Origin: Hamiltosporidium tvaerminnensis FI-OER-3-3
Lineage: Eukaryota; Fungi; Microsporidia
Direction: 5' to 3'
NCBI GenBank assembly: GCA_022605425.2
Contig: CM061251.1
Span: forward strand, 372,001-436,000
DNA: 64,000 bases
Part shown: piece after piece, positions 5,222 through 57,098 of the stretch
How the letters are laid out: each line of letters starts with the position of its first letter
How positions within the stretch are numbered: the stretch's first letter is position 1
Position numbers and translations under genes: made by a program
Notes under the pieces: model-generated
Told to the model about the DNA's origin: nothing
The model's database searches: none
What the model saw: only the letters and a program-made list of their open reading frames with translations

Positions 5222-5600
5222 AAAAATGCATAAAAGTTAAAAGTATAAATAAACAGAAAGAAATGCATAAAAATTAAAAGTACAAATAAACAGAAAGAAA
5301 TGCATTAAAGTTAAAAGTATAAATACAATAGAAAATATTAATGCATGAAAAACAAAGAAGATAAGATAGAGAAGAATAAAAAAAATGCATAAAAGTTAAA
5401 AGTACAAATAAACAGAAAGAAATGCATTAAAGTTAAAAGTACAAATACAATAGAAAATATTAATGCATGAAAAACAAAGAAGATAAGATAGAGAAGAATA
5501 AAAAAATGCATAAAAGTTAAAAGTATAAATAAACAGAAAAAAATGCATAAAAGTTAAAAGTATAAATACAAATGAAAGTATTAATGCATGAAAAACAAAC
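5222..5600. repeat. Compound A-rich tandem repeat (~37-bp unit nested in a ~120-bp higher-order unit)
   Basis: aaatgcataaaagttaaaagtataaata recurs ~7 times; attaatgcatgaaaaacaaa recurs 3 times. Confidence 0.85.
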
Positions 5601-5661
5601 CTGAGAAATAGAGAAGAGAAGAAGAAAGAAAAAATATTAAATTCCTTTAATCCAACACCTC

Positions 5662-8600
5662 TTAAGAACTACCATCACTTATATCCCTCTCAATACTCTC
5701 CCCTACATCATTAACACACACTCTAATACCATCTACCTCATCAATATACTGTCCTTCTATCCTATCAACACTCTCTACTCTTACCACTTCCTTTACTAAC
5801 TTACTTATCACCCATAAATAACCTTCTACCCATTTATTTTCACCACATAACACCCCTACACTACACATCCTTATACCACTACTGTTAACTATACTTCTTA
5901 TTCTTTTAACAACTTCAACCATACTAGTAAATCCTAAATCATAACACCCTTTACGTATAGGAAAATCAGAAACACATATACTAATAGGTGTTAAGTCAGT
6001 CACCATATTTGTAAGAGAAGATATATCAGTATTAAAGGGGTGTTGTTTATTAGGTAAGTCGTTAACAGGGTGTAAAGTATTAGTACTGTTGTTAACGGGG
6101 TGTAAAGTATCGGTATTGTTCATAACACCCTCTTTACTACTACTGTTACTAGCACCCTCTTTACTACTATTGTTACTAACACCCTCTTTACTACTATTGT
6201 TACTAGCACCCTCTTTACTACTATTGTTACTAACACCCCCTACTATCTCTTTATTACTAACACCCCCTACTATCTCTTTACTACTCCTGTTATTAACACC
6301 CCCTACCATATCCAATCCACCATCACCCTCTTTATCACCCCCTCTTATATACTTCCCTTTAACCTCTTCATACCTCCCTACCATCTTCTGATATATCTCT
6401 TCACTTATAAAAGGCATTACAGTACTAAACATCTTTAAAATATCATAAAACACAGACACTAACACTACAACATACTCTCTTTCCTTTCTAACCTTACATA
6501 ACTCTATAAACACATCACAAAAGTCATAAATAAAATACTTATGAATAGAACTACAAACACCCATAAAATTATAAGAAGTAATACACTTAACATACTCTTC
6601 AATACATATATTTCTCTTTTCATATATCCATTGTAATATAAGGTCATACTCTATAGCACTATTAAGAATATTACTGTTATTCATAATAAAGTACATAGTA
6701 TTAGTTATATTATTAGTATTAGGGTTAGTGGTAGTGGTATTAGGGTTAGTAGTAGTTGTATTAGGGTTATTATTGTTAGTGGTAGTTCTATTAGGGTTAT
6801 TATTGTTAGTGGTAGTTGTACTAGAGTTGTTATTGTTAGTGTTAGTTGTATTAGGGTTAGTGGTAGTTGTAGTGGTATTGTTACTTTTGTTCTTATCACT
6901 AACACCCTCCAACCTATTACTATCCAACCTATTACTATCCAACCTATTACTATCTAGCCCACTACCCAACCTATTACTATCCAACCTATTACTATCCAAC
7001 CTATTACTATCTAACCTATTACTATCTAACCCACTACCCAACCTATTACTACCCAACCTATTACTATCTAACCTACTACATCCCAACCCACTACCCAACC
7101 TATCCTTATCATTAACACACATCTCCATAAACTTATAGGCATTCCATATCTTATTACACATCTTTCTATACCCTTCTATCCTTAACACATCTAAATTAAC
7201 ATCCTTAACACCACTACAATAACAACACAACCCAAACCTTAAAGCATCTGCTCCACACTCACCTATTCCTCTAGGAAAATCTATTCTTAAAGCTTCTATA
7301 CCTCTTTTAATCTCCTTATCACTCATATTACTATTACTAACACGTAATACTAACTTATCTATACTTATACCTTCTATAACATCTATAGGGTCTATAACAT
7401 TACCTACACTCTTACTCATCTTCTTACCATGACTGTCTCTTATCAGTCCATGTAATAATATTTTATTAAAAGGTATTTTATTGGTTAATTCTATACCTAA
7501 CATTACCATCCTAGCAACCCAAAAGAATAAAATATCAGAACCTGTCTCTAATACTGAGGTAGGATAGAAATAAGAATAATCTTTTGTATTATCAGGCCAA
7601 CCCATAACAGTAAAAGGCCATAAACCAGAAGAGAACCAAGTATCAAGAACATCATCATCCTGTACGAGATTGATATTAGGGTGTGTGTTATTATCATTAG
7701 GGATAGGGATATTAGGGATAGTGGTATGTATGTTAGTACTATCAGGGTTAGTACTATCATGGTTATTATTATCAGGGCTATTATCAGAGTTAGTACTATC
7801 CTTAACATGCTTAATATCCTTATTAATATTACTATTGTTATCCTTAATACTACCATCCTTATTATTACTATTGTTATCCTTATTATCCCAACTACTACCC
7901 CCACCACTACTACTACCCCCACCACTAGTACTACCCCCACTACTACTATCACCCCTATTATACCTGCTCATGTAATTCTTCATTGCCTCATCCTTGTCCT
8001 TTCCTACTACCCATCCTTGTCTAACATTATCAACATAAACTCTATAAGCAGGTACTCTATGTCCCCATACAAGTTGTCTACTTAAACACCAGTCACGTAT
8101 ATTTTCTAACCATTTAAACCATCTGTTTTTACACTCATCAGGTATAATTTCTATTTGGTTGGTTGTTACTGCTTGTATGGCTTTTTGTGCCATGTTGTTA
8201 CATTTAAGCCACCATTGTTTCTTAAGTATTGGTTCTATTATATCATTACTACGTGAACAGAATGGTAGGGTGTATGTATGTGGTTCTTCTTTTTTTAGGA
8301 GGTTTATGTTTTTTAGGTGGGTTAATATTTTTGTACGGGCGATAAATCTTTTAAGGCCATTAATAGATTTAAGGAAGTGTATATTGGGTGTGATGTTGGG
8401 TGTGGTAGTAGCGTTATCACCCTGTTGTATATTAGTAGTAGTATTATCACCCTGTTGTTTATTAGTAGTAGTATTATCACCCTGTTGTTTATTAGTAGTA
8501 GTATTATCACCCTGTTGTTTATTAGTACTAGTATTAACACCCTGTTGTACATTAGTACTAGTATTATCACCCTGTTGTATATTAGTACTAGCGTTATCAC

Positions 8601-10340
8601 CCTGTTGTTTATTAGTAGTAGTATTATCACCCTGTTGTTTATTAGTACTAGTATTAACACCCTGTTGTCATTGTACTGTTTATCCCCTGTTGTTATTAGT
8701 ACTAGCGTTAACACCCTGTTGTTTATTAGTACTAGTATTAACACCCTGTTGTATATTAGTACTAGTATTAACACCCTGTTGTACATTAGTACTAGTATTA
8801 TCACCCTGTTGTATATTAGTACTAGCGTTAACACCCTGTTGTTTATTAGTACTAGTATTAACACCCTGTTGTATATTAGTACTAGTATTAACACCCTCTA
8901 TAATATTACTCTCGCTGCTATCACCCCCCATCTTACCCACCCCTCTATCCACCCTATCGTTACTACTTTCTATTTCCTTTATAATATCTGTTATTTCTAT
9001 ATTATTATCTTCATTTAACACCCTTATAATATCAAGATTATACTTACGTGACAATTCAAAATCATTAAAGTCATGTGCAGGTGTTATTTTAAGTACACCT
9101 GTTCCAATATCAAGAGTAGCTTGTTCATCAAATATAATTGGTATTATTTTACCTGTTAAAGGGTTTATAGCCTTTTTACCTTTAAGGTGTGTTAATGAAG
9201 GGTTAGCACATAAAGCAGTATCACCTAATATTGTCTCTGGTCTTGTAGTAGCTATAGTTATATAAGTGGTGTTGTTATTAGTATTCGTATTCTTATTGGT
9301 ATTAGTGTTGTTATTAGATGGGTTAGAGGGGGTATTAATAGAAAGGTTACTAAAGGGGTGTTGTATATCAGTACTGTTACTAACCCTTTTATAATTATCT
9401 TTGCTAATATCTATATTACTCTTATTAATATCTTTATTACTCTTATAACTATTCTTATAACTTCCTTATAACTATCCTTATCACTAACAATATCTTTACT
9501 AATATCTATCACATCATTACCCTTACTAATATCTATCACACCACTACCCTCTTCACTACCTATCACACTACACTCGGTAATAGGATAGTCTATGTAGTAC
9601 ATTATACCAAATAAATACTCCCCTTTATCTACCTTAATAACAGTATTAGGTGTTACTTCTCTATTATCTACTTCTAAGTCAGAAATAGAAGTGTGTAAAG
9701 CACCACACCAATTAACAAGTCTATTATCTCTATAAATAAGATTTTTATTATAAAGAATTATAAAAGAATGAATAACTGCCTTATTAATAGAAGAATCCAT
9801 TGTAAACTTTTGTCTGGAAAAGTCTAAAGAAGCTCCTATACGTTTTATTTGACTGTAAATACGTGTTTGGTATAAAGAAGTGTGTTGGTATAACAAATTG
9901 AGTTTTTCTTTTTTAGAAAGTAAATTTAAATGAATATTTTGTAATAAAAGGTTTTTCTCAATAACAGTTTGTGTTGCTATTCCTGCATGGTCAGTGCCTG
10001 GTAAATAAAGGGTGGGTATTTTGTTCATACGGTAATATCTTATAAGAATATCTTGTAATGCTAACATCATGGTGTGTCCTATATGAAGAGAACCTGTTAC
10101 GTTGGGTGGTGGTAGTATTATGGTGAATGGTTTTTTTGTGGTGGTTATTTGTGGAGTGAAGAGGTTGTGGTGTTGCCAGAATGAGAACCAGTGTTTCTCG
10201 GTGGTTAGTGGGTTGTATTGGGTGGATTGTGATTTTGTTGGTGGTTTTTGTTTTTGTGGATTGTGGTGTGGTTTTGAGTGGAATTTTTGTAATTTTTCTT
10301 GTTTTTTTTGTAGTTTTTTAGATTTTCTATCAAGAGACAT
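5662..10340 (-). CDS. VAS1: Valyl-tRNA synthetase, ~1560 aa, with five low-complexity insertions; split by one frameshift (~9463) and one local stop (8680)
   Basis: PPPNVTGSLHIGH (HIGH), PGTDHAGIATQ, ATTRPETILGD (~9225-9255), GTGVLKITPAHDFNDF (~9060-9105), DWCLSRQLVWGHRVP, DVLDTWFSSGLWPF, KMSKS, GADALRF. The 9054 and 8193 ORFs share a frame; the 10340 ORF joins by restoring one base. Confidence 0.95.
6030..6350 (-). repeat. Coding repeats in ValRS: 27-bp EGVSNNSSK array then 30-bp HPVNNSTNTL units
   Basis: taacaccctctttactactattgttac units and gttaacagggtgtaaagtat units. Confidence 0.9.
6700..7100 (-). repeat. Coding repeats in ValRS: 15-bp RLDSN array followed by TTTNPN/Asn-Thr array
   Basis: ccaacctattactat units at 6908-7075; ttagggtta-containing units at 6715-6865. 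Confidence 0.9.
8410..8900 (-). repeat. 30-bp coding minisatellite (NTSTNKQQGV), ~16 copies, inside the ValRS editing (CP1) region
   Basis: Plus-strand unit caccctgttgtttattagtactagtattaa repeated head-to-tail. Confidence 0.95.
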
Positions 10341-10343
10341 GGG
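10341..10343 (-). promoter_or_regulatory. Microsporidian CCC-like transcription-initiation motif before the ValRS ATG
   Basis: taaCCCatg on the minus strand. The same motif precedes EF-1alpha (accccc-agaaa-atg), 30178 (accctca-atg), 44831 (atcccctt-atg) and 55664 (gccc-atg). Confidence 0.7.
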
Positions 10344-10404
10344 TTACAGTAATATAAAGTATTATAGTGGTAGGGTGTGTTGTGTGGATAGGGTGTGGTA
10401 GTGT

Positions 10405-10498
10405 GGATAGTAGTAGTAAGGATAGTAGTAGTAAGGATAGTAGTAGTAAGGATAGTAGTAGTAAGGATAGTAGTAGTAAGGATAGTAGTAGTAAGGAT
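10405..10498. repeat. 15-bp tandem repeat ggatagtagtagtaa x6
   Basis: Directly visible upstream of ValRS. Confidence 0.95.
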
Positions 10499-10985
10499 AT
10501 ATGTTTAATATCAAAGAATAGAAAATAATAAGGAAATATAAAGCTAATAAAAAAGGGAAATAAAGATAATAAAGATAAAGAAAAATAAGAAAGATAAAGA
10601 AATAATAGTAAAAGGAAAGAAATACAGATAAGAAATATAAAGAAAAGAAATACAAAGGAAAGAAATATAAAGAAAAGAAATACAAAGAACATAATAGATA
10701 ATAATGTTATATACTTACTATTCTATTTACTATTCTACTTACTCTTCTACTCCTTATTATCTCTTTCTAGTATTTTATTGTCTTTACTCTTCTATTTACT
10801 ATTCTATTTACTCTTCTATTTACTATTACTTACTCTTCTATTTACTCTTCTATTCCTTATTATCTCTTTCTAGTATTTTATTGTCTTTACAATTCTATTT
10901 ACTAATCTTAGATATTTAAGATTTTTAAATACTTTTTAATAGATTCTTAAATATTTTATATTTTATAGTGTTATTGTTGTTAGAG

Positions 10986-39949: not shown

Positions 39950-40424
39950 TTTCTGGGGGTAAAAAATTTAAGAATTTATATTTGTAAAGAAATGGTAGTA
40001 TGGGGTGTTATTTATAATAATATTGATGGTGTTAAATTTATATTAAAATATTTATTAGTTGGTTTATAAGAAAAGCGGTTTTATTTACACAAAAAAATTG
40101 ATAAAATATTTCAATAGAAATTGTATTTTTACTTGAAATTGTACTTTAGTAGAAATTGTATTTTTAGTTGAAATTGTATTTTTATGAGAAAAGTACATAT
40201 TTCTAAGAAAGTAGTTCATTTAGTAGAATTATGTTTTAAAATCAAGACGTTTTAGTAAACAGTTTTATAAAAGAAGAATATATTTATAAGACATAACAGT
40301 AATATTTTCTTAGTATTTAACGAATGTATTTTTAAAAAGAAGAAAAAGGTGTAGTTGTGTGAATGAGAGAAGGTTTGTGTATGTGAAAGACAGAGTGCAA
40401 GATAGTTGGTGTCTGCGAGGAGTA

Positions 40425-40622
40425 AGATAGAGTGTGGGAGATAGAAAGAGAGTGTGGGAGATAGAAAGAGAGTGTGGGAGATAGAAAGAGAGCAGAGAAT
40501 ATGAGAGATGGTATGAAAGATAGAAAGAGAGTATGAAAGAGAGAAGAGTGTGGGAGATAGAAAGGAGCAGAGAATATGAGAGATGGTATGAAAGATAGAA
40601 AGAGAGTATGAAAGAGAGAAGA
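40425..40622. repeat. Purine-rich tandem repeats (20-bp gagtgtgggagatagaaaga x3 plus a ~70-bp duplication)
   Basis: Directly visible upstream of EF-1alpha. Confidence 0.85.
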
Positions 40623-41289
40623 GATAAAGAGAGAAGAAACAATATGTGATATATCATATAACTAATCATAAAATTCAAAGAAGAAAGAGAATGAATAAAG
40701 AGAAGTAAAACGAAAAGAAAGCGAAAAGTTACGTTTATAAAAGAAAAGAAACGTGTTTTAATATTAAAAATATTTTTATAATAAAATAACAGTTAAAGAA
40801 ATATTTAAAAATCGATATAAAGAAAATATAATTTATTTTTAAAAGGAAAGAATTATTGTCTGATTTAATATTAATAAAGTGATTGTTAAATTAAATTTTA
40901 TTTAATAGAAAATAAAGGAAATAAAATATAAAATATAAAATATAAAATATAAAATATAAAATATAAATAGAATATGAAGCAATTAAAAGAAAATTATAGA
41001 ATGGCAATAAAATATAAAAAATAATAAAGGAAATAAGAAATAATATGAATTAAAAGAAAATTATAGAATGGCAATAAAATATAAAAAAAAAATAATAAAG
41101 GAAATAAGAAATAATATGAATTAAAAAATGAAAAGGAATATGTAAATAATAGGAATATAATAGAATATGCAGTAATAAAAAAATAAAAGAGATTCAAGAA
41201 AATAAAATATAAATTGTAGGAATATAATAGATAATATATAGATAGAATATAAGTACTCTGAGATAACAGTATGCACTTATTATAAAGTA

Positions 41290-44830: not shown

Positions 44831-46255
44831 ATGAAAATAGAAGATATAAACGAATCAAACATAAATTCACTTCTCCTTCATATTTCTACAGACAAGAATC
44901 TTTATAATAGTTGTACTGATACTCTTATTCTTTATCTTTTATATAACTATAATACACAGCATGATATTATTCTTAGTAAGATTAAGATTTTATTACTTGG
45001 AAAAAGAAATAAGAAAAATAAAAATTTACATGAAGACAGAGAGTGTGATAGAGGGAGTGATAGGGATGAAGCTAGTGATGAAGGTAGGGATGATAAAAAA
45101 GATAGAAAAAGAAGAAGAAGCAAAATTAGACATACCAAAGCAAAACACACCAATCACACTAGTGATAAAGACTTTAATATATCTTTCAATTCAAATAAAA
45201 TCATAAATAAAATATTTAAAAAAATATTAAAAATAAAAAATAAAGAAATAGAAGATACTGCTATCGAGACATCTTTAAGTGTTTTAGAAGAAAAGAGTTT
45301 AGTTTTACGAGAAACTGTTTATTATTATTTTGAAAGTATTTATTTAAGTTGTGATGAGGTTAGTGAATATGGAATAGAGGTATTAAAAAGAATATTAAGT
45401 GTATATAAAATAGAATTTGATAATAAAGATGTTGATAGTGATAATGATAGTAGATGTATTGATAATAGAAGTGCTGATATTACTGATACAACCTATACTA
45501 ATACAAATATATCTAAAATAAAAGATACAAATGTAAACCCACCTTTTAAAATTAGTAAGACATCACAGAATCCTAGTGAGGATGGTTTAATTGATATAAC
45601 AAATATGGATTTTGATCTTTGTAAAGAAAATAATGTCTTCAAATTAAATTTAAAAAAGAAAGGAGATAGAGATGTTTATATAGAAAAGTTATATAAATTA
45701 TTAACTGTTATATTAATTGGTAGAGAATATAAAGGAAGTATTATGTTTTTAATGTTAATTTTGTTGGTAAATAAAGTGGAAGAAAAAAAAAGTTTAAGAA
45801 AATTAATCAAGGTGTTCTTTATGGGTGTGAGCGATATGTTGGAGGTTTTGAGAGAGTGTTATAAGGGCGTGGGCAAATATGGGATATTTATATTGAATAG
45901 AGTTATTTATGAGTGTAGGACGCGAAATATAAAAATTAAATATAAAAAAATGTTAAAAATGGTTGGTTTTTTAGAGATTAGGAATAAAGGGGTTATTTCG
46001 GGTGTGGATTGGAAAGATTTAAGACTTAGTGATATGAGAAGGGTCTTTGGGAAATTTAAAAAACCGGGTGTTTTTATTGATTTGTGTAAAAAACTTATTA
46101 AACGTGAAAATGATGTTAAAAAAATCCAGAAATTTAAAGAAACTGTAATTTCTGTTTCTGAAAAGAAATTAAGCAATTATGATTATAAAAGAGTAAATAT
46201 ACTTAAAGATTTTATTGATAGAAAATTAGAGGTTTGTAATGGAAAGTTATTATAG
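44831..46255 (+). CDS. Hypothetical protein, 474 aa, with two low-complexity inserts
   Basis: Long ORF in very AT-rich DNA with a CCC motif before the ATG; no family recognised. Confidence 0.8.
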   Translation: MKIEDINESNINSLLLHISTDKNLYNSCTDTLILYLLYNYNTQHDIILSKIKILLLGKRNKKNKNLHEDRECDRGSDRDEASDEGRDDKKDRKRRRSKIRHTKAKHTNHTSDKDFNISFNSNKIINKIFKKILKIKNKEIEDTAIETSLSVLEEKSLVLRETVYYYFESIYLSCDEVSEYGIEVLKRILSVYKIEFDNKDVDSDNDSRCIDNRSADITDTTYTNTNISKIKDTNVNPPFKISKTSQNPSEDGLIDITNMDFDLCKENNVFKLNLKKKGDRDVYIEKLYKLLTVILIGREYKGSIMFLMLILLVNKVEEKKSLRKLIKVFFMGVSDMLEVLRECYKGVGKYGIFILNRVIYECRTRNIKIKYKKMLKMVGFLEIRNKGVISGVDWKDLRLSDMRRVFGKFKKPGVFIDLCKKLIKRENDVKKIQKFKETVISVSEKKLSNYDYKRVNILKDFIDRKLEVCNGKLL

Positions 46256-46395
46256 AAGAATATGCTATATGTTTTATTACCGAATTTATTTAATGAAAAT
46301 TAGAGGTTTGTAGTAGAAAGCTATTATAAAAGAATGAGCTATATGTTTTATTACCGAAATTATTGAATGAAAATTAGAGGTTTGTAACGGAAAGT
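46222..46395 (+). repeat. ~72-bp tandem duplication (2.3 copies) of the gene's stop region
   Basis: aaattagaggtttgta recurs at ~46223, ~46297 and ~46370. Confidence 0.85.
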
Positions 46396-47148
46396 GATTT
46401 TTTAATAAATTATATATTTTTGATTTTACGTTTAGCGAGAAGAAAATGTGTAAATATTAGTTTTTAAGTTTACTTATCATTCACTAAGAATCAGTTAATT
46501 CATTTTAAAATACACAGGTAAATATTTAATTTCAATTCCTTTCCTTTACATTTACATTTATATAACATATTTAATTTAGATTACAAAAGATAAACTTTTA
46601 TTTTTGTACAATTTTTTTTGTGTTAAATAAATGTAAATGTAAACGAAATTTTAATTATAGAAATAATATTTTTTAATCCAAAACCTTGGTTTAATTGCCT
46701 CATATTCCATTATATCGAATACAGTATTTCTTCTGTTATTTTGTAATGTTGATAGACTAGTTTAAAACTTTAAAAAGAATTTATAAATAATTATACTTTA
46801 CATTAAAGAGGTTTTTAAACTTTACATCAATATAAAATTAGTCCTATTAAATATTTTACAACAAAAATTTTAGCTTTTTAAATGTAAGTTATATCAACCA
46901 TTAATATTTTTAAGTATTTTATAATCAAAGAAAACAAATTATATTTAACTAAACTTAGTTTGTAATGTTTTATTTTATATATGTGTACGATTAATTGCTA
47001 TATTTTATATTCTTATGTTTTTTAAGTATGGCAGTCATTTGGAAAACAGAAAAAAATATGTTTTCTTTATTTATTATTACTATATGATTTTCGTTTTTTT
47101 TCTTTGTTTAAAATTATCTAAATTTATATTTTTTTTTGATTTAAATAT

Positions 47149-55663: not shown

Positions 55664-57098
55664 ATGGAAATTTCAAAAAAAGAAATCATAATTATATGTT
55701 GCATACTTGGTATTTTATCGACCATGGCTATAACTTATAAACTTATTCAGAATAAAAAAGACAGTAACAAAAAAAATGATGGAAAAAAACCCGAAAACCA
55801 AAAGTTGAAAGCGAAAGAAAAAGAATCACCGAATATAACTAAAAATATACCAAAAATTTCACATAATGTTTCACCACATAACGTATCACCACCACCTTTA
55901 CCAAGTGATATACCAACACCGCCACCTTTACCAAGTGATATACCATCACCACCACCTTTACCAAGTGAAATACCAACACCACAACCTTTACCAAGTGATA
56001 TACCAACACCACCACCTTTACCAAGTAATATACCGACACCCCAGCCTTTACCAAGTGATATACCAACACCACCACCTTTACCAAGTGATATACCAACACC
56101 ACCACCTTTACCAAGTGAAATACCATCACCACCACCTTTACCAAGTGAAATACCAACACCACCACCTTTACCAAGTGATATACCAACACCACCACCTTTA
56201 CCAAGTAATATACCGACACCCCAGCCTTTACCAAGTGATATACCAACACCACCACCTTTACCAAGTGATATACCAACACCGCCACCTTTACCAAGTGATA
56301 TACCATCACCACCACCTTTACCAAGTGAAATACCAACACCACCACCTTTACCAAATGATATACCGACACCCCAGCCTTTACCAAGTGATATACCAACACC
56401 ACCACCTTTACCAAGTGAAATACCAACACCGCAGCCTTTACCAAATGATATACCGACACCCCAGCCTTTACCAAGTGATATACCAACACCACCACCTTTA
56501 CCAAGTGATATAACAACACCACTACCTTTACCAAGTGATATACCAACACCACCACCTTTACCAAGTGATATACCATCACCACCACCACCAAAAAAAAAAA
56601 AAACACCCCACCAACCAAAAAAAAAAAAAAAAAAACAACCTTAACAAAAAAAAAAACCATCACCACCACCACAGTGAAATACCAACACCGCAGCCTTTAC
56701 CAAATGATATACCGACACCCCAGCCTTTACCAAGTGATATACCAACACCACCACCTTTACCAAGTGAAATACCAACACCGCAGCCTTTACCAAATGATAT
56801 ACCGACACCCCAGCCTTTACCAAGTGATATACCAACACCACCACCTTTACCAAGTGATATACTGACACCCCAGCCTTTACCAACTGACATACCACATAAT
56901 GTTCCGACGGGGAATTCCGGAAACATTCTTCCGGTACAGGGATCTAGTTCCACAACCGGATCTCATCCTGGAGCACATAATACACCTTTATCAAATGAAG
57001 CTAACAGCCTTGAAGAGGTACTTAAAAAAGGTATTCTAAGCAAGTTTCATAAAGTTGTGAGCCCTTCATCAGTCTTGTCATCATATTCATCTGACTGA
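55664..57098 (+). CDS. Signal-anchored proline-rich repeat protein, ~30 x [10 protein letters not shown]; interrupted by an A-run scar at ~56590-56670
   Basis: N-terminal [20 protein letters not shown]; 30-bp repeat array 55887-56890; the same repeat resumes in another frame after the A-runs. Confidence 0.85.

What the first reader, a model, noticed from the sequence alone, without database searches (positions are those of the whole stretch)
5640..10720. Strand-symmetric sawtooth G/C skew: every ValRS insertion sits on a G-rich to C-rich switch
Seen: each of the five insertions reads G-rich then C-rich, and does so on either strand. On the plus strand the switches are near 6120, 6895, 7780, 8400-8900 and 9370, with more outside the gene at ~5640 and ~10700. 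Conserved blocks between them drift back from C-rich to G-rich, changing codon and amino-acid choice (H/P/T/Q at block starts, V/G/E/R at block ends). Left halves carry GGGTG or TTAGGG words; right halves carry CACCC or TAACCC. Transcription cannot explain a pattern that flips within one gene. Inference: recurrent break or initiation points with bidirectional strand-asymmetric mutation and repeat growth. The polarity matches C loss on resected 3' overhangs or G-rich 3'-end extension; fold-back hairpin formation is an alternative.
Basis: partly seen in the sequence, partly recalled or inferred. Interest (0 to 1): 0.8.

Follow-up and report, generated by a model that had tools for sequence, protein, structure and literature searches.

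The report
Sawtooth G/C skew around gene inserts
In the Daphnia parasite Hamiltosporidium tvaerminnensis, each repeat insert in the valyl-tRNA synthetase gene, and in many other genes, reads G-rich then C-rich on both strands, and this bias spreads into the conserved coding sequence, which points to an unusually strong local mutation process that reshapes essential proteins.

Summary
The window is H. tvaerminnensis contig 6. The single-copy ValRS gene (minus strand, 10340-5665) has five in-frame tandem-repeat inserts. 100-bp GC skew reaches +1.0 and -1.0. G-to-C switches lie at 5636, 6119, 6890, about 7766, 9378 and 10710, and a graded one spans 8414-8897.

Conserved blocks drift from C-rich to G-rich at all three codon positions. 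At fourfold sites G:C is 0:18, 2:7 and 8:2 along a block.

Genome-wide, G-core units followed by C-core units outnumber the reverse order 301 to 23. Skewed DNA is about 6% of an unbiased sample, and 88% of it lies within 300 bp of arrays. On the G-rich strand C is replaced by G while A and T barely change.

Independent short-read contigs and H. magnivora confirm the sequence. Four other microsporidian ValRS genes have inserts but no sawtooth.

Fold-back, telomere-repeat, replication-origin and Rev1 readings were tested and not supported. The best reading (0.45) is single-strand exposure beside unstable arrays, from break resection or fork stalling, that converts C:G pairs to G:C.

Other first-reader notes report the same pattern in RPA1, UFD2, P5A-ATPase and CTR9 of this genome. 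No searched paper describes it.

The parts
5665..10340 (-). Single-copy valyl-tRNA synthetase gene of H. tvaerminnensis: conserved blocks B1-B5 plus the C-terminal part, interrupted by five in-frame repeat inserts
   Evidence: Pfam tRNA-synt_1 and Anticodon_1. Best hit is H. magnivora ValRS at 82% identity. Block coordinates come from tblastn. There is only one copy in the genome.
9576..10247 (-). Conserved block B1. The sense strand drifts from C-rich (skew about -0.7) to G-rich (about +0.7).
9262..9575 (-). Insert 1, with a sharp G-to-C switch at 9376/9380. The assembly changes frame near 9413-9468.
   Evidence: Short-read contig X16 record 7 has 2 fewer bases across 9417-9547, which restores the frame.
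8953..9261 (-). Conserved block B2 (C-to-G drift in the sense strand)
8365..8952 (-). Insert 2: 16 units of a 30-bp direct array (TTATCACCCTGTTGTATATTAGTACTAGTA). The skew change is graded, through AGTAGT versus AGTACT variants. An irregular 54-nt double unit at 8658-8711 carries two in-frame stops (8682, 8670).
   Evidence: Word depth here is 25-100 times single copy, so the unit family is dispersed.
7981..8364 (-). Conserved block B3 (C-to-G drift in the sense strand)
7672..7980 (-). Insert 3, with a G-to-C switch between 7736 and 7796
7108..7671 (-). Conserved block B4 (64% identical to E. cuniculi). The sense skew rises from about 0 to +1.0, and the last ~320 bp are almost free of C.
6637..7107 (-). 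Insert 4. On the plus strand a G-type 21/30-bp array (6696-6859) is followed by a C-type 15-bp array (6908-7088), with the switch at 6889/6892.
   Evidence: In H. magnivora the arrays differ by 72-, 3- and 6-nt indels while the junction is conserved.
6391..6636 (-). Conserved block B5 (anticodon-binding domain), with C-to-G drift in the sense strand
5950..6390 (-). Insert 5. On the plus strand a 30-bp GGGTG-type array (6048-6110) is followed by a 27-bp CACCC-type array (6114-6306), with the switch at 6118/6121.
5603..5660 (.). Non-coding G-to-C switch at the 3' end of the gene (5628/5644, just beyond the stop codon at 5662-5664)
10350..10910 (.). Upstream non-coding G-to-C switch at 10706/10714. 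Purine-rich arrays lie on the left and pyrimidine-rich arrays on the right. A perfect 15-bp x 6.3 array lies at 10405-10499.

Best explanation
The ValRS gene, and many other long genes of H. tvaerminnensis, carry translated in-frame minisatellite inserts in tolerant loops. I propose that these arrays are unstable sites where DNA repeatedly becomes single-stranded on the strand that runs 5'->3' towards the array. This could happen by 5' resection of breaks inside the array, or by gaps on the lagging-strand template when forks stall at the array from either side. Damage on that exposed strand, or its error-prone refilling, converts C:G pairs to G:C with G on the exposed strand. Each strand then becomes G-rich and nearly C-free as it approaches the array, and C-rich as it leaves it. 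The effect fades over about 150-350 bp into the flanking conserved code. The arrays themselves keep changing by unit slippage.

Shown: the anatomy, the polarity, the synonymous-site gradient, the C-for-G composition change, the link to arrays, and the restriction to this lineage. Inferred: the single-strand exposure, the breaks or stalled forks, and the enzyme responsible.
For: - The skew flips sign sharply inside inserts and decays outwards. In a meta-profile of 15 junctions it is +0.76 at -100 bp, -0.82 at 0, and about 0 by -400 and +200 bp.
- The gradient is present at third and fourfold-degenerate positions of conserved blocks, so it comes from mutation and not from amino-acid selection.
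- The same polarity is seen at two non-coding junctions.
- Across the genome, GGGTG..GGGTG..CACCC occurs 301 times against 23 for the reverse order. Junctions between two arrays are 11 G-to-C and 0 C-to-G.
- 88% of strongly skewed DNA lies within 300 bp of an array, against 29% of the background.
- In family arrays the spacer orientation continues across the junction and only the core flips, and AGTACT becomes AGTAGT or ACTACT. This points to single-base C/G transversions and not to inversion.
- Net composition change is C -0.107 and G +0.132, with A and T changing by less than 0.02.
- There is a human precedent: the flanks of meiotic breaks show strand-asymmetric C>N and A>N changes (including C>G) on the resected single strand, with the same polarity, and tandem-repeat indels at the centre (PMC7615360).
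- The sequence is confirmed by independent short-read contigs and by H. magnivora.
Against: - There is no direct evidence for breaks, single-stranded DNA or stalled forks.
- The C-to-G spectrum usually needs Rev1. The only Y-family polymerase found is Pol kappa-like, and no Rev1 was detected.
- H. magnivora and H. tvaerminnensis are identical in the conserved blocks, so no substitutions could be polarised.
- The indels between the two species lie inside arrays and not at the junction.
- Other genes in the same window (RhoGAP, three mannosyltransferases, an EF-like GTPase) show no skew, so the process is very local.
- The sense strand carries more G-domain than C-domain (10.4 vs 6.1 kb), so coding or transcription adds a second effect.
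Confidence: 0.45

Rival explanations
1. Strand-biased mismatch correction or gene conversion. Recombination starts at the arrays, and heteroduplex always uses the 3'-ended strand. G/C transversion heterozygotes then give G.G on one side and poorly repaired C.C on the other. Conversion therefore favours one orientation of the G:C pair on each side of the initiation site.
For: It accounts for a pure C-for-G exchange without an A/T change, for the higher GC content in skewed domains, for the sign flip at a centre, and for a tract-sized decay.
Against: My own working-through of C.C versus G.G repair gives, if anything, the opposite sign. H. tvaerminnensis is reported to be largely clonal (my own knowledge, not checked here). 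No heterozygosity data were examined.
Confidence: 0.1
2. Selection on the product. Inserts are built as a Gly/Asp/Glu/Ser/Val/Arg-rich peptide followed by an Asn/Thr/Pro/His-rich peptide, or as a G-rich then C-rich mRNA stem. The DNA skew would be a by-product.
For: Inserts are translated: the frame is open for about 3 kb, unit lengths are multiples of 3, and all five indels against H. magnivora are multiples of 3. Sense-strand G-then-C order automatically makes the antisense strand read G-then-C too. One RPA1 insert folds better than its controls (z=-3.6).
Against: The gradient is present at fourfold-degenerate sites of conserved blocks. The same polarity occurs at non-coding junctions 5636 and 10710. 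Six of seven inserts fold no better than halves shuffled separately. Inserts at the same loops in four other microsporidia lack the pattern.
Confidence: 0.1
3. Structural origin. Each insert is an inverted duplication (fold-back priming or template switch), or a foldback-type mobile element whose arms are tandem repeats in opposite orientation.
For: The C-type family unit is the reverse complement of the G-type unit. The core AACA-GGG/CCC-TGTT has palindromic arms that could mediate strand switching. The unit family is dispersed at 25-100 times single-copy word depth. One RPA1 insert has complementary halves.
Against: In ValRS the two halves have different units and are not complementary. The spacer orientation often continues through the junction. 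Inversion within an array would give equal numbers of both junction types, not 13:1. No shared termini or junction motif were found. It does not explain the skew in the flanking unique code.
Confidence: 0.1
4. Classical replication skew. Switches mark fixed replication termini (G-to-C) and origins (C-to-G).
For: Exposure of the lagging-strand template gives the right sign at a fixed terminus. A sawtooth skew is known from human N-domains (my own knowledge).
Against: Units here are 0.4-1 kb, far below any replicon size. In N-domains the sharp jump is the upward one at origins, and here the sharp jump is downward. About 94% of the genome has no such skew.
Confidence: 0.07
5. Healed breaks. Telomerase or another 3'-end extension activity adds G-rich repeats to both ends of a break, and the ends are then rejoined head to head.
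For: The polarity equals chromosome-end polarity. The telomere repeat is TTAGGG. TTAGGG words occur in the left halves of inserts 3 and 4.
Against: TTAGGG ranks low among its letter permutations in G-domains. GGGTTAGGG occurs once in 24.5 kb. The dominant word is GGGTGTTA. CCCTAA is absent from the locus. This reading does not explain the skew in conserved code.
Confidence: 0.05

Closest known systems
Strand-asymmetric mutagenesis on resected single-stranded DNA beside double-strand breaks (human meiotic hotspots, Hinch et al. 2023, PMC7615360; yeast single-strand DNA hypermutation, Yang et al. 2008, cited in that paper)
   Same: The sign of the asymmetry flips at a centre. The strand running 5'->3' towards the centre loses C. 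C>G changes are prominent. The scale is sub-kilobase to kilobase. Tandem-repeat indels sit at the centre.
   Different: In humans this is a faint excess of rare mutations. Here the composition is driven almost to saturation (skew about 1), it alters conserved protein sequence, it sits inside genes at translated repeat inserts, and A>G makes little net contribution. Breaks are not demonstrated here.
Replication-associated skew sawtooth (human N-domains; bacterial origin/terminus skew)
   Same: Sawtooth profile of (G-C)/(G+C) with abrupt jumps and gradual returns.
   Different: The jump here has the opposite direction, the scale is about a thousand times smaller, and only about 6% of the genome is affected.
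Low-complexity Asn-rich insertions in housekeeping proteins of AT-rich parasites (Plasmodium; Asn-rich in-frame expansions in Hamiltosporidium MCM noted by Haag et al. 2019, PMC6944219)
   Same: In-frame, repeat-built and fast-evolving insertions in surface loops of conserved enzymes.
   Different: Here every insert is bipartite with a fixed G-then-C polarity, and the bias extends into flanking conserved codons. The searched papers on this genome do not mention this.
N-region polarity at V(D)J junctions (TdT prefers dG, so junctions read G-rich on the left and C-rich on the right; my own knowledge)
   Same: G-then-C polarity on both strands at a joined break.
   Different: N regions are a few untemplated bases. 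Here the inserts are hundreds of bases of tandem units, plus skew in the flanks.
Foldback elements and palindromic inverted duplications
   Same: Arrays of tandem units in opposed orientation around a centre, within a dispersed family.
   Different: The arms are usually not complementary, the spacer orientation can continue across the junction, and no termini or target-site duplications were found.

Membership tests
Break- or single-strand-DNA-centred strand-asymmetric mutagenesis | The mutational or compositional asymmetry changes sign at a point centre and decays with distance | tested here: met
   Meta-profile of 15 junctions; ValRS profile
Break- or single-strand-DNA-centred strand-asymmetric mutagenesis | Polarity: the strand ending 3' at the centre loses C | tested here: met
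   G-rich on the left and C-rich on the right on both strands. Genome-wide 301 vs 23. The polarity stated in PMC7615360 matches.
Break- or single-strand-DNA-centred strand-asymmetric mutagenesis | Spectrum of C>N and A>N changes on the exposed strand | tested here: inconclusive
   Only equilibrium composition was available: C -0.107, G +0.132, A -0.015, T -0.008. Unit variants AGTACT to AGTAGT/ACTACT indicate C/G transversions. No polarised substitutions were available.
Break- or single-strand-DNA-centred strand-asymmetric mutagenesis | Physical breaks, resection tracts or stalled forks at the centre | not testable with these tools
   Needs END-seq, single-strand DNA ChIP or Okazaki-fragment sequencing in infected Daphnia
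Replication origin/terminus skew | The abrupt jump is upward (C-to-G) at origins, and domains are of replicon size | tested here: not met
   The abrupt jump is downward. Units are 0.4-1 kb.
Fold-back / palindromic duplication or foldback transposon | The two arms are reverse complements of each other | tested here: not met
   Inverted-repeat search. Different units in the two halves. Folding z-scores from -1.3 to +0.5 in 6 of 7 inserts.
Fold-back / palindromic duplication or foldback transposon | Conserved termini and target-site duplications | tested here: not met
   No shared motif at 16 junctions. The outer ends merge into the variable loops of the orthologues.
Interstitial telomere repeats / head-to-head telomere fusion | Runs of the organism's telomere unit (TTAGGG)n facing each other | tested here: not met
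   Telomere unit confirmed. GGGTTAGGG occurs once in 24.5 kb of G-domains. No CCCTAA in the locus.
Introns or other excised intervening sequences | Removed from the mRNA, so free of reading-frame constraint | tested here: inconclusive
   The frame is open from 9468 to 5664 apart from one irregular unit. Unit sizes and all five interspecies indels are multiples of 3. One frame break is removed by a short-read contig. Iso-Seq-confirmed introns in this species average 28 bp. No RNA reads were available here.

The most novel reading that the evidence does not exclude
Hamiltosporidium genes are tiled by sub-kilobase mutational domains, each centred on a fragile in-frame minisatellite. Recurrent break repair or fork stalling has flipped C:G pairs to saturation and rewritten conserved protein sequence. 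The genome would then carry a natural base-resolution record of fragile sites and of how far single-strand exposure reaches. The enzyme making the C-to-G change without a detectable Rev1 would be unknown.
Probability: 0.35. Interest if true: 0.85.

Novelty: new variant of a known kind. Interest (0 to 1): 0.78.

Why it matters
Local strand asymmetry this strong (one strand almost free of C for hundreds of bases, flipping every 0.4-1 kb inside essential genes) has not been reported for a nuclear genome in the papers I could search.

It shows that mutation pressure can override amino-acid conservation over short distances. It explains the odd composition of Hamiltosporidium protein inserts: Gly/Asp/Ser/Val-rich halves followed by Asn/Thr/Pro/His-rich halves.

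It also offers a system in which break-associated or fork-associated mutagenesis, faint in humans, can be read directly from the sequence.

There is a practical point for annotation. G-free stretches contain no ATG, GTG or TTG, and the arrays hold residual assembly errors, so gene models in this genome need care.

Tried and rejected
- Rev1 and abasic-site bypass as the source of C-to-G. The genome search found one IMS-domain gene, which is Pol kappa-like by PDB and Pfam comparison, plus one UDG. There is no Rev1 support.
- Deamination signature (G+T against A+C). AT skew in the G orientation averages 0.00.
- Hairpin or fold-back. Inverted-repeat search and half-wise shuffled folding gave no support.
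- Telomere-repeat origin. Word statistics gave no support.
- RNA evidence. No RNA run holds the locus, and the one transcriptome laid gave 2 poor reads.
- Polarising substitutions with H. magnivora. The conserved blocks are identical.
- Strain differences from short-read contigs. There are too few single-copy sites, and the repeats are swamped by paralogous units.
- A larger unbiased genome sample.
- A genome-wide purine-run then pyrimidine-run pattern. Locally there were only 2 R-to-Y and 0 Y-to-R junctions.
- DNA methylation. Low-complexity and coding DNA are hypomethylated in this species, so this was not pursued.

Full report
**Identity of the sequence.** The window is G000 contig 6, 372001-436000, of a 21,638,905-bp, 17-contig genome. 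The best hit of the large ORF is H. magnivora ValRS at 82% identity. The assembly statistics (21.64 Mb, 17 contigs, N50 1,444,059) and the (TTAGGG)n telomeres match the published H. tvaerminnensis assembly.

**The gene.** ValRS lies on the minus strand. tblastn with E. cuniculi, Binucleata and Conglomerata ValRS gives these conserved blocks:

| Block | Coordinates |
|---|---|
| B1 | 10247-9576 |
| B2 | 9261-8953 |
| B3 | 8364-7981 |
| B4 | 7671-7108 |
| B5 | 6636-6391 |

Five inserts lie between and after these blocks. Pfam confirms tRNA-synt_1 and Anticodon_1. The gene is single-copy.

**Reading frame.**
- One frame is open from 9468 to 5664, apart from two stops (8682, 8670) inside an irregular 54-nt double unit. 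Another frame is open from 10346 to 9413.
- An independent short-read contig has two fewer bases across 9417-9547, and that restores the frame.
- All tandem units have lengths that are multiples of three.
- All five indels against H. magnivora (72, 3, 6, 9 and 9 nt) are multiples of three.
- The inserts are therefore coding expansions, and the frame breaks are most likely residual assembly errors. No RNA reads were available.

**The observation in ValRS.**
- GC skew in 100-bp windows runs from -1.00 to +1.00, although the window as a whole is balanced.
- An HMM finds direct G-to-C switches at 5628/5644, 6118/6121, 6889/6892, 7736/7796, 9376/9380 and 10706/10714. Every C-to-G return passes through 57-460 bp of neutral sequence.
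- Insert 2 is a single direct 30-bp array. Its skew changes gradually, through AGTAGT versus AGTACT unit variants.
- The skew holds at all three codon positions.
- In conserved blocks, third-position G:C goes 23:43, 27:23 and 41:10 from 5' to 3'. Fourfold-degenerate sites go 0:18, 2:7 and 8:2. The bias therefore acts at the nucleotide level and drags amino-acid choice along with it.

**Generality across the genome.**
- In 234 kb of essentially unbiased sequence (the window plus 17 arbitrary 10-kb pieces), 6.2% is strongly skewed. Of that, 88% lies within 300 bp of a tandem array with period 9 or more, against 29% of the background.
- RPA1 (L020) and UFD2 (L022), both flagged by other first readers, show the same bipartite inserts.
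- Junctions with arrays on both sides are 11 G-to-C and 0 C-to-G.
- The meta-profile of 15 junctions rises to +0.76, jumps to -0.82, and returns to zero within about 350 bp on one side and 200 bp on the other.
- An unbiased whole-genome pattern count gives 301 cases of two GGGTG cores followed by CACCC (or its mirror) against 23 of the opposite order. GGGTGTT..AACACCC gives 235 against 47 for the reverse, although the first count includes an unrelated dispersed element.
- Six further loci fetched this way all lie in long open frames and show G-core units followed by C-core units.

**What the process looks like.**
- In the G-rich orientation, mean composition is A .357, C .028, G .268, T .348, against a background of .372/.135/.136/.356. 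C is exchanged for G. AT skew does not follow (mean 0.00).
- The dispersed 30-nt family has a core AACA-GGG/CCC-TGTT with palindromic arms. Its spacer occurs in either orientation with either core. At many junctions the spacer orientation continues while only the core flips. This favours point transversions or very local flips over inversion of arrays.
- The arrays evolve fast by unit indels. The junction and the conserved blocks are identical between H. tvaerminnensis and H. magnivora.
- Conglomerata, Binucleata and two unnamed relatives have ValRS inserts at the same loops but no sawtooth. The phenomenon is therefore specific to the Hamiltosporidium lineage.
- Other genes in this window show no skew.
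- Sense strands carry somewhat more G-domain than C-domain (10.4 vs 6.1 kb). This is a secondary effect of coding or transcription.

**Mechanism.**
- The polarity, the centre-and-decay shape and the scale match strand-asymmetric mutagenesis on single-stranded DNA beside breaks. This is documented in humans, where C>N and A>N changes (including C>G) occur on the resected strand, and tandem-repeat indels sit at the centre (PMC7615360).
- Forks stalling at the arrays from either side would expose the same strands, so I treat the two as one class and give it 0.45.
- Four other readings were tested and not supported: Rev1, deamination, telomerase and fold-back.
- Classical replication skew has the wrong jump direction and the wrong scale.
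- Product-level selection is contradicted by the fourfold-site gradient and by the non-coding junctions.

**Literature.** Haag et al. 2019 mention in-frame Asn-rich expansions in Hamiltosporidium MCM proteins, of unknown nature. None of the searched papers on this genome mentions GC skew or polarity of inserts. Other first-reader notes of this scan report the same pattern elsewhere in the genome. I checked RPA1 and UFD2 myself.

Noticed in passing
window 8658-8711 and 9413-9468: These are the only frame problems in ValRS, and both lie inside repeat units. One is a 54-nt irregular double unit with two in-frame stops. The other is a 2-base excess that a short-read contig lacks. They are probably residual long-read assembly errors.
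   Followed up: partly
window 5944-6287, 8352-9039, 9212-9383; loci L025-L030: A dispersed family of 30-nt minisatellites (GGGTGTTAA..AGTACT..AACAACA and its complement) has 25-100 times single-copy word depth in short-read data. It sits inside many long open reading frames.
   Followed up: partly
G000:C1:131149-131191 and about 20 further places listed: A high-copy element carries GGGTGTTGGTTCCTCATGCATCTCTG..CATAATAACACCC, a 7-bp inverted pair around a conserved 29-nt loop. It probably belongs to the dispersed structured repeat noted by other readers.
   Followed up: no
L031:658-2259 (-) and L032: The genome search found a single Y-family DNA polymerase, Pol kappa-like and not Rev1 or Pol eta, and a single uracil-DNA glycosylase.
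   Followed up: partly
window 10405-10499: A perfect 15-bp x 6.3 array (GGATAGTAGTAGTAA, 100% identity) lies just upstream of the ValRS start codon. It looks like a very recent expansion in non-coding DNA.
   Followed up: no
window 39955-41253, 45039-46468, 55839-56851: These are further long one-letter domains. One is a G-only stretch upstream of the EF-like GTPase gene. One is a G-rich 474-aa ORF with no Pfam hit. One is a 1-kb C-only stretch encoding a proline-rich ORF.
   Followed up: no
window 5400-5571: 37-bp tandem units containing ATGCAT lie in the purine-rich spacer just downstream of ValRS.
   Followed up: no
G000:C1:1059317-1059658: A second class I tRNA synthetase (30% identical to ValRS block B4) lies in a 1572-codon open frame. 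It has family minisatellite junctions nearby (C1:1059898), so it is probably another gene with expanded inserts.
   Followed up: no
L024, L035, L033, L034: ValRS of Conglomerata obtusa (1421 aa), Binucleata daphniae (1135 aa) and two unnamed relatives carries inserts at the same loops as in Hamiltosporidium, without the polarised skew.
   Followed up: yes
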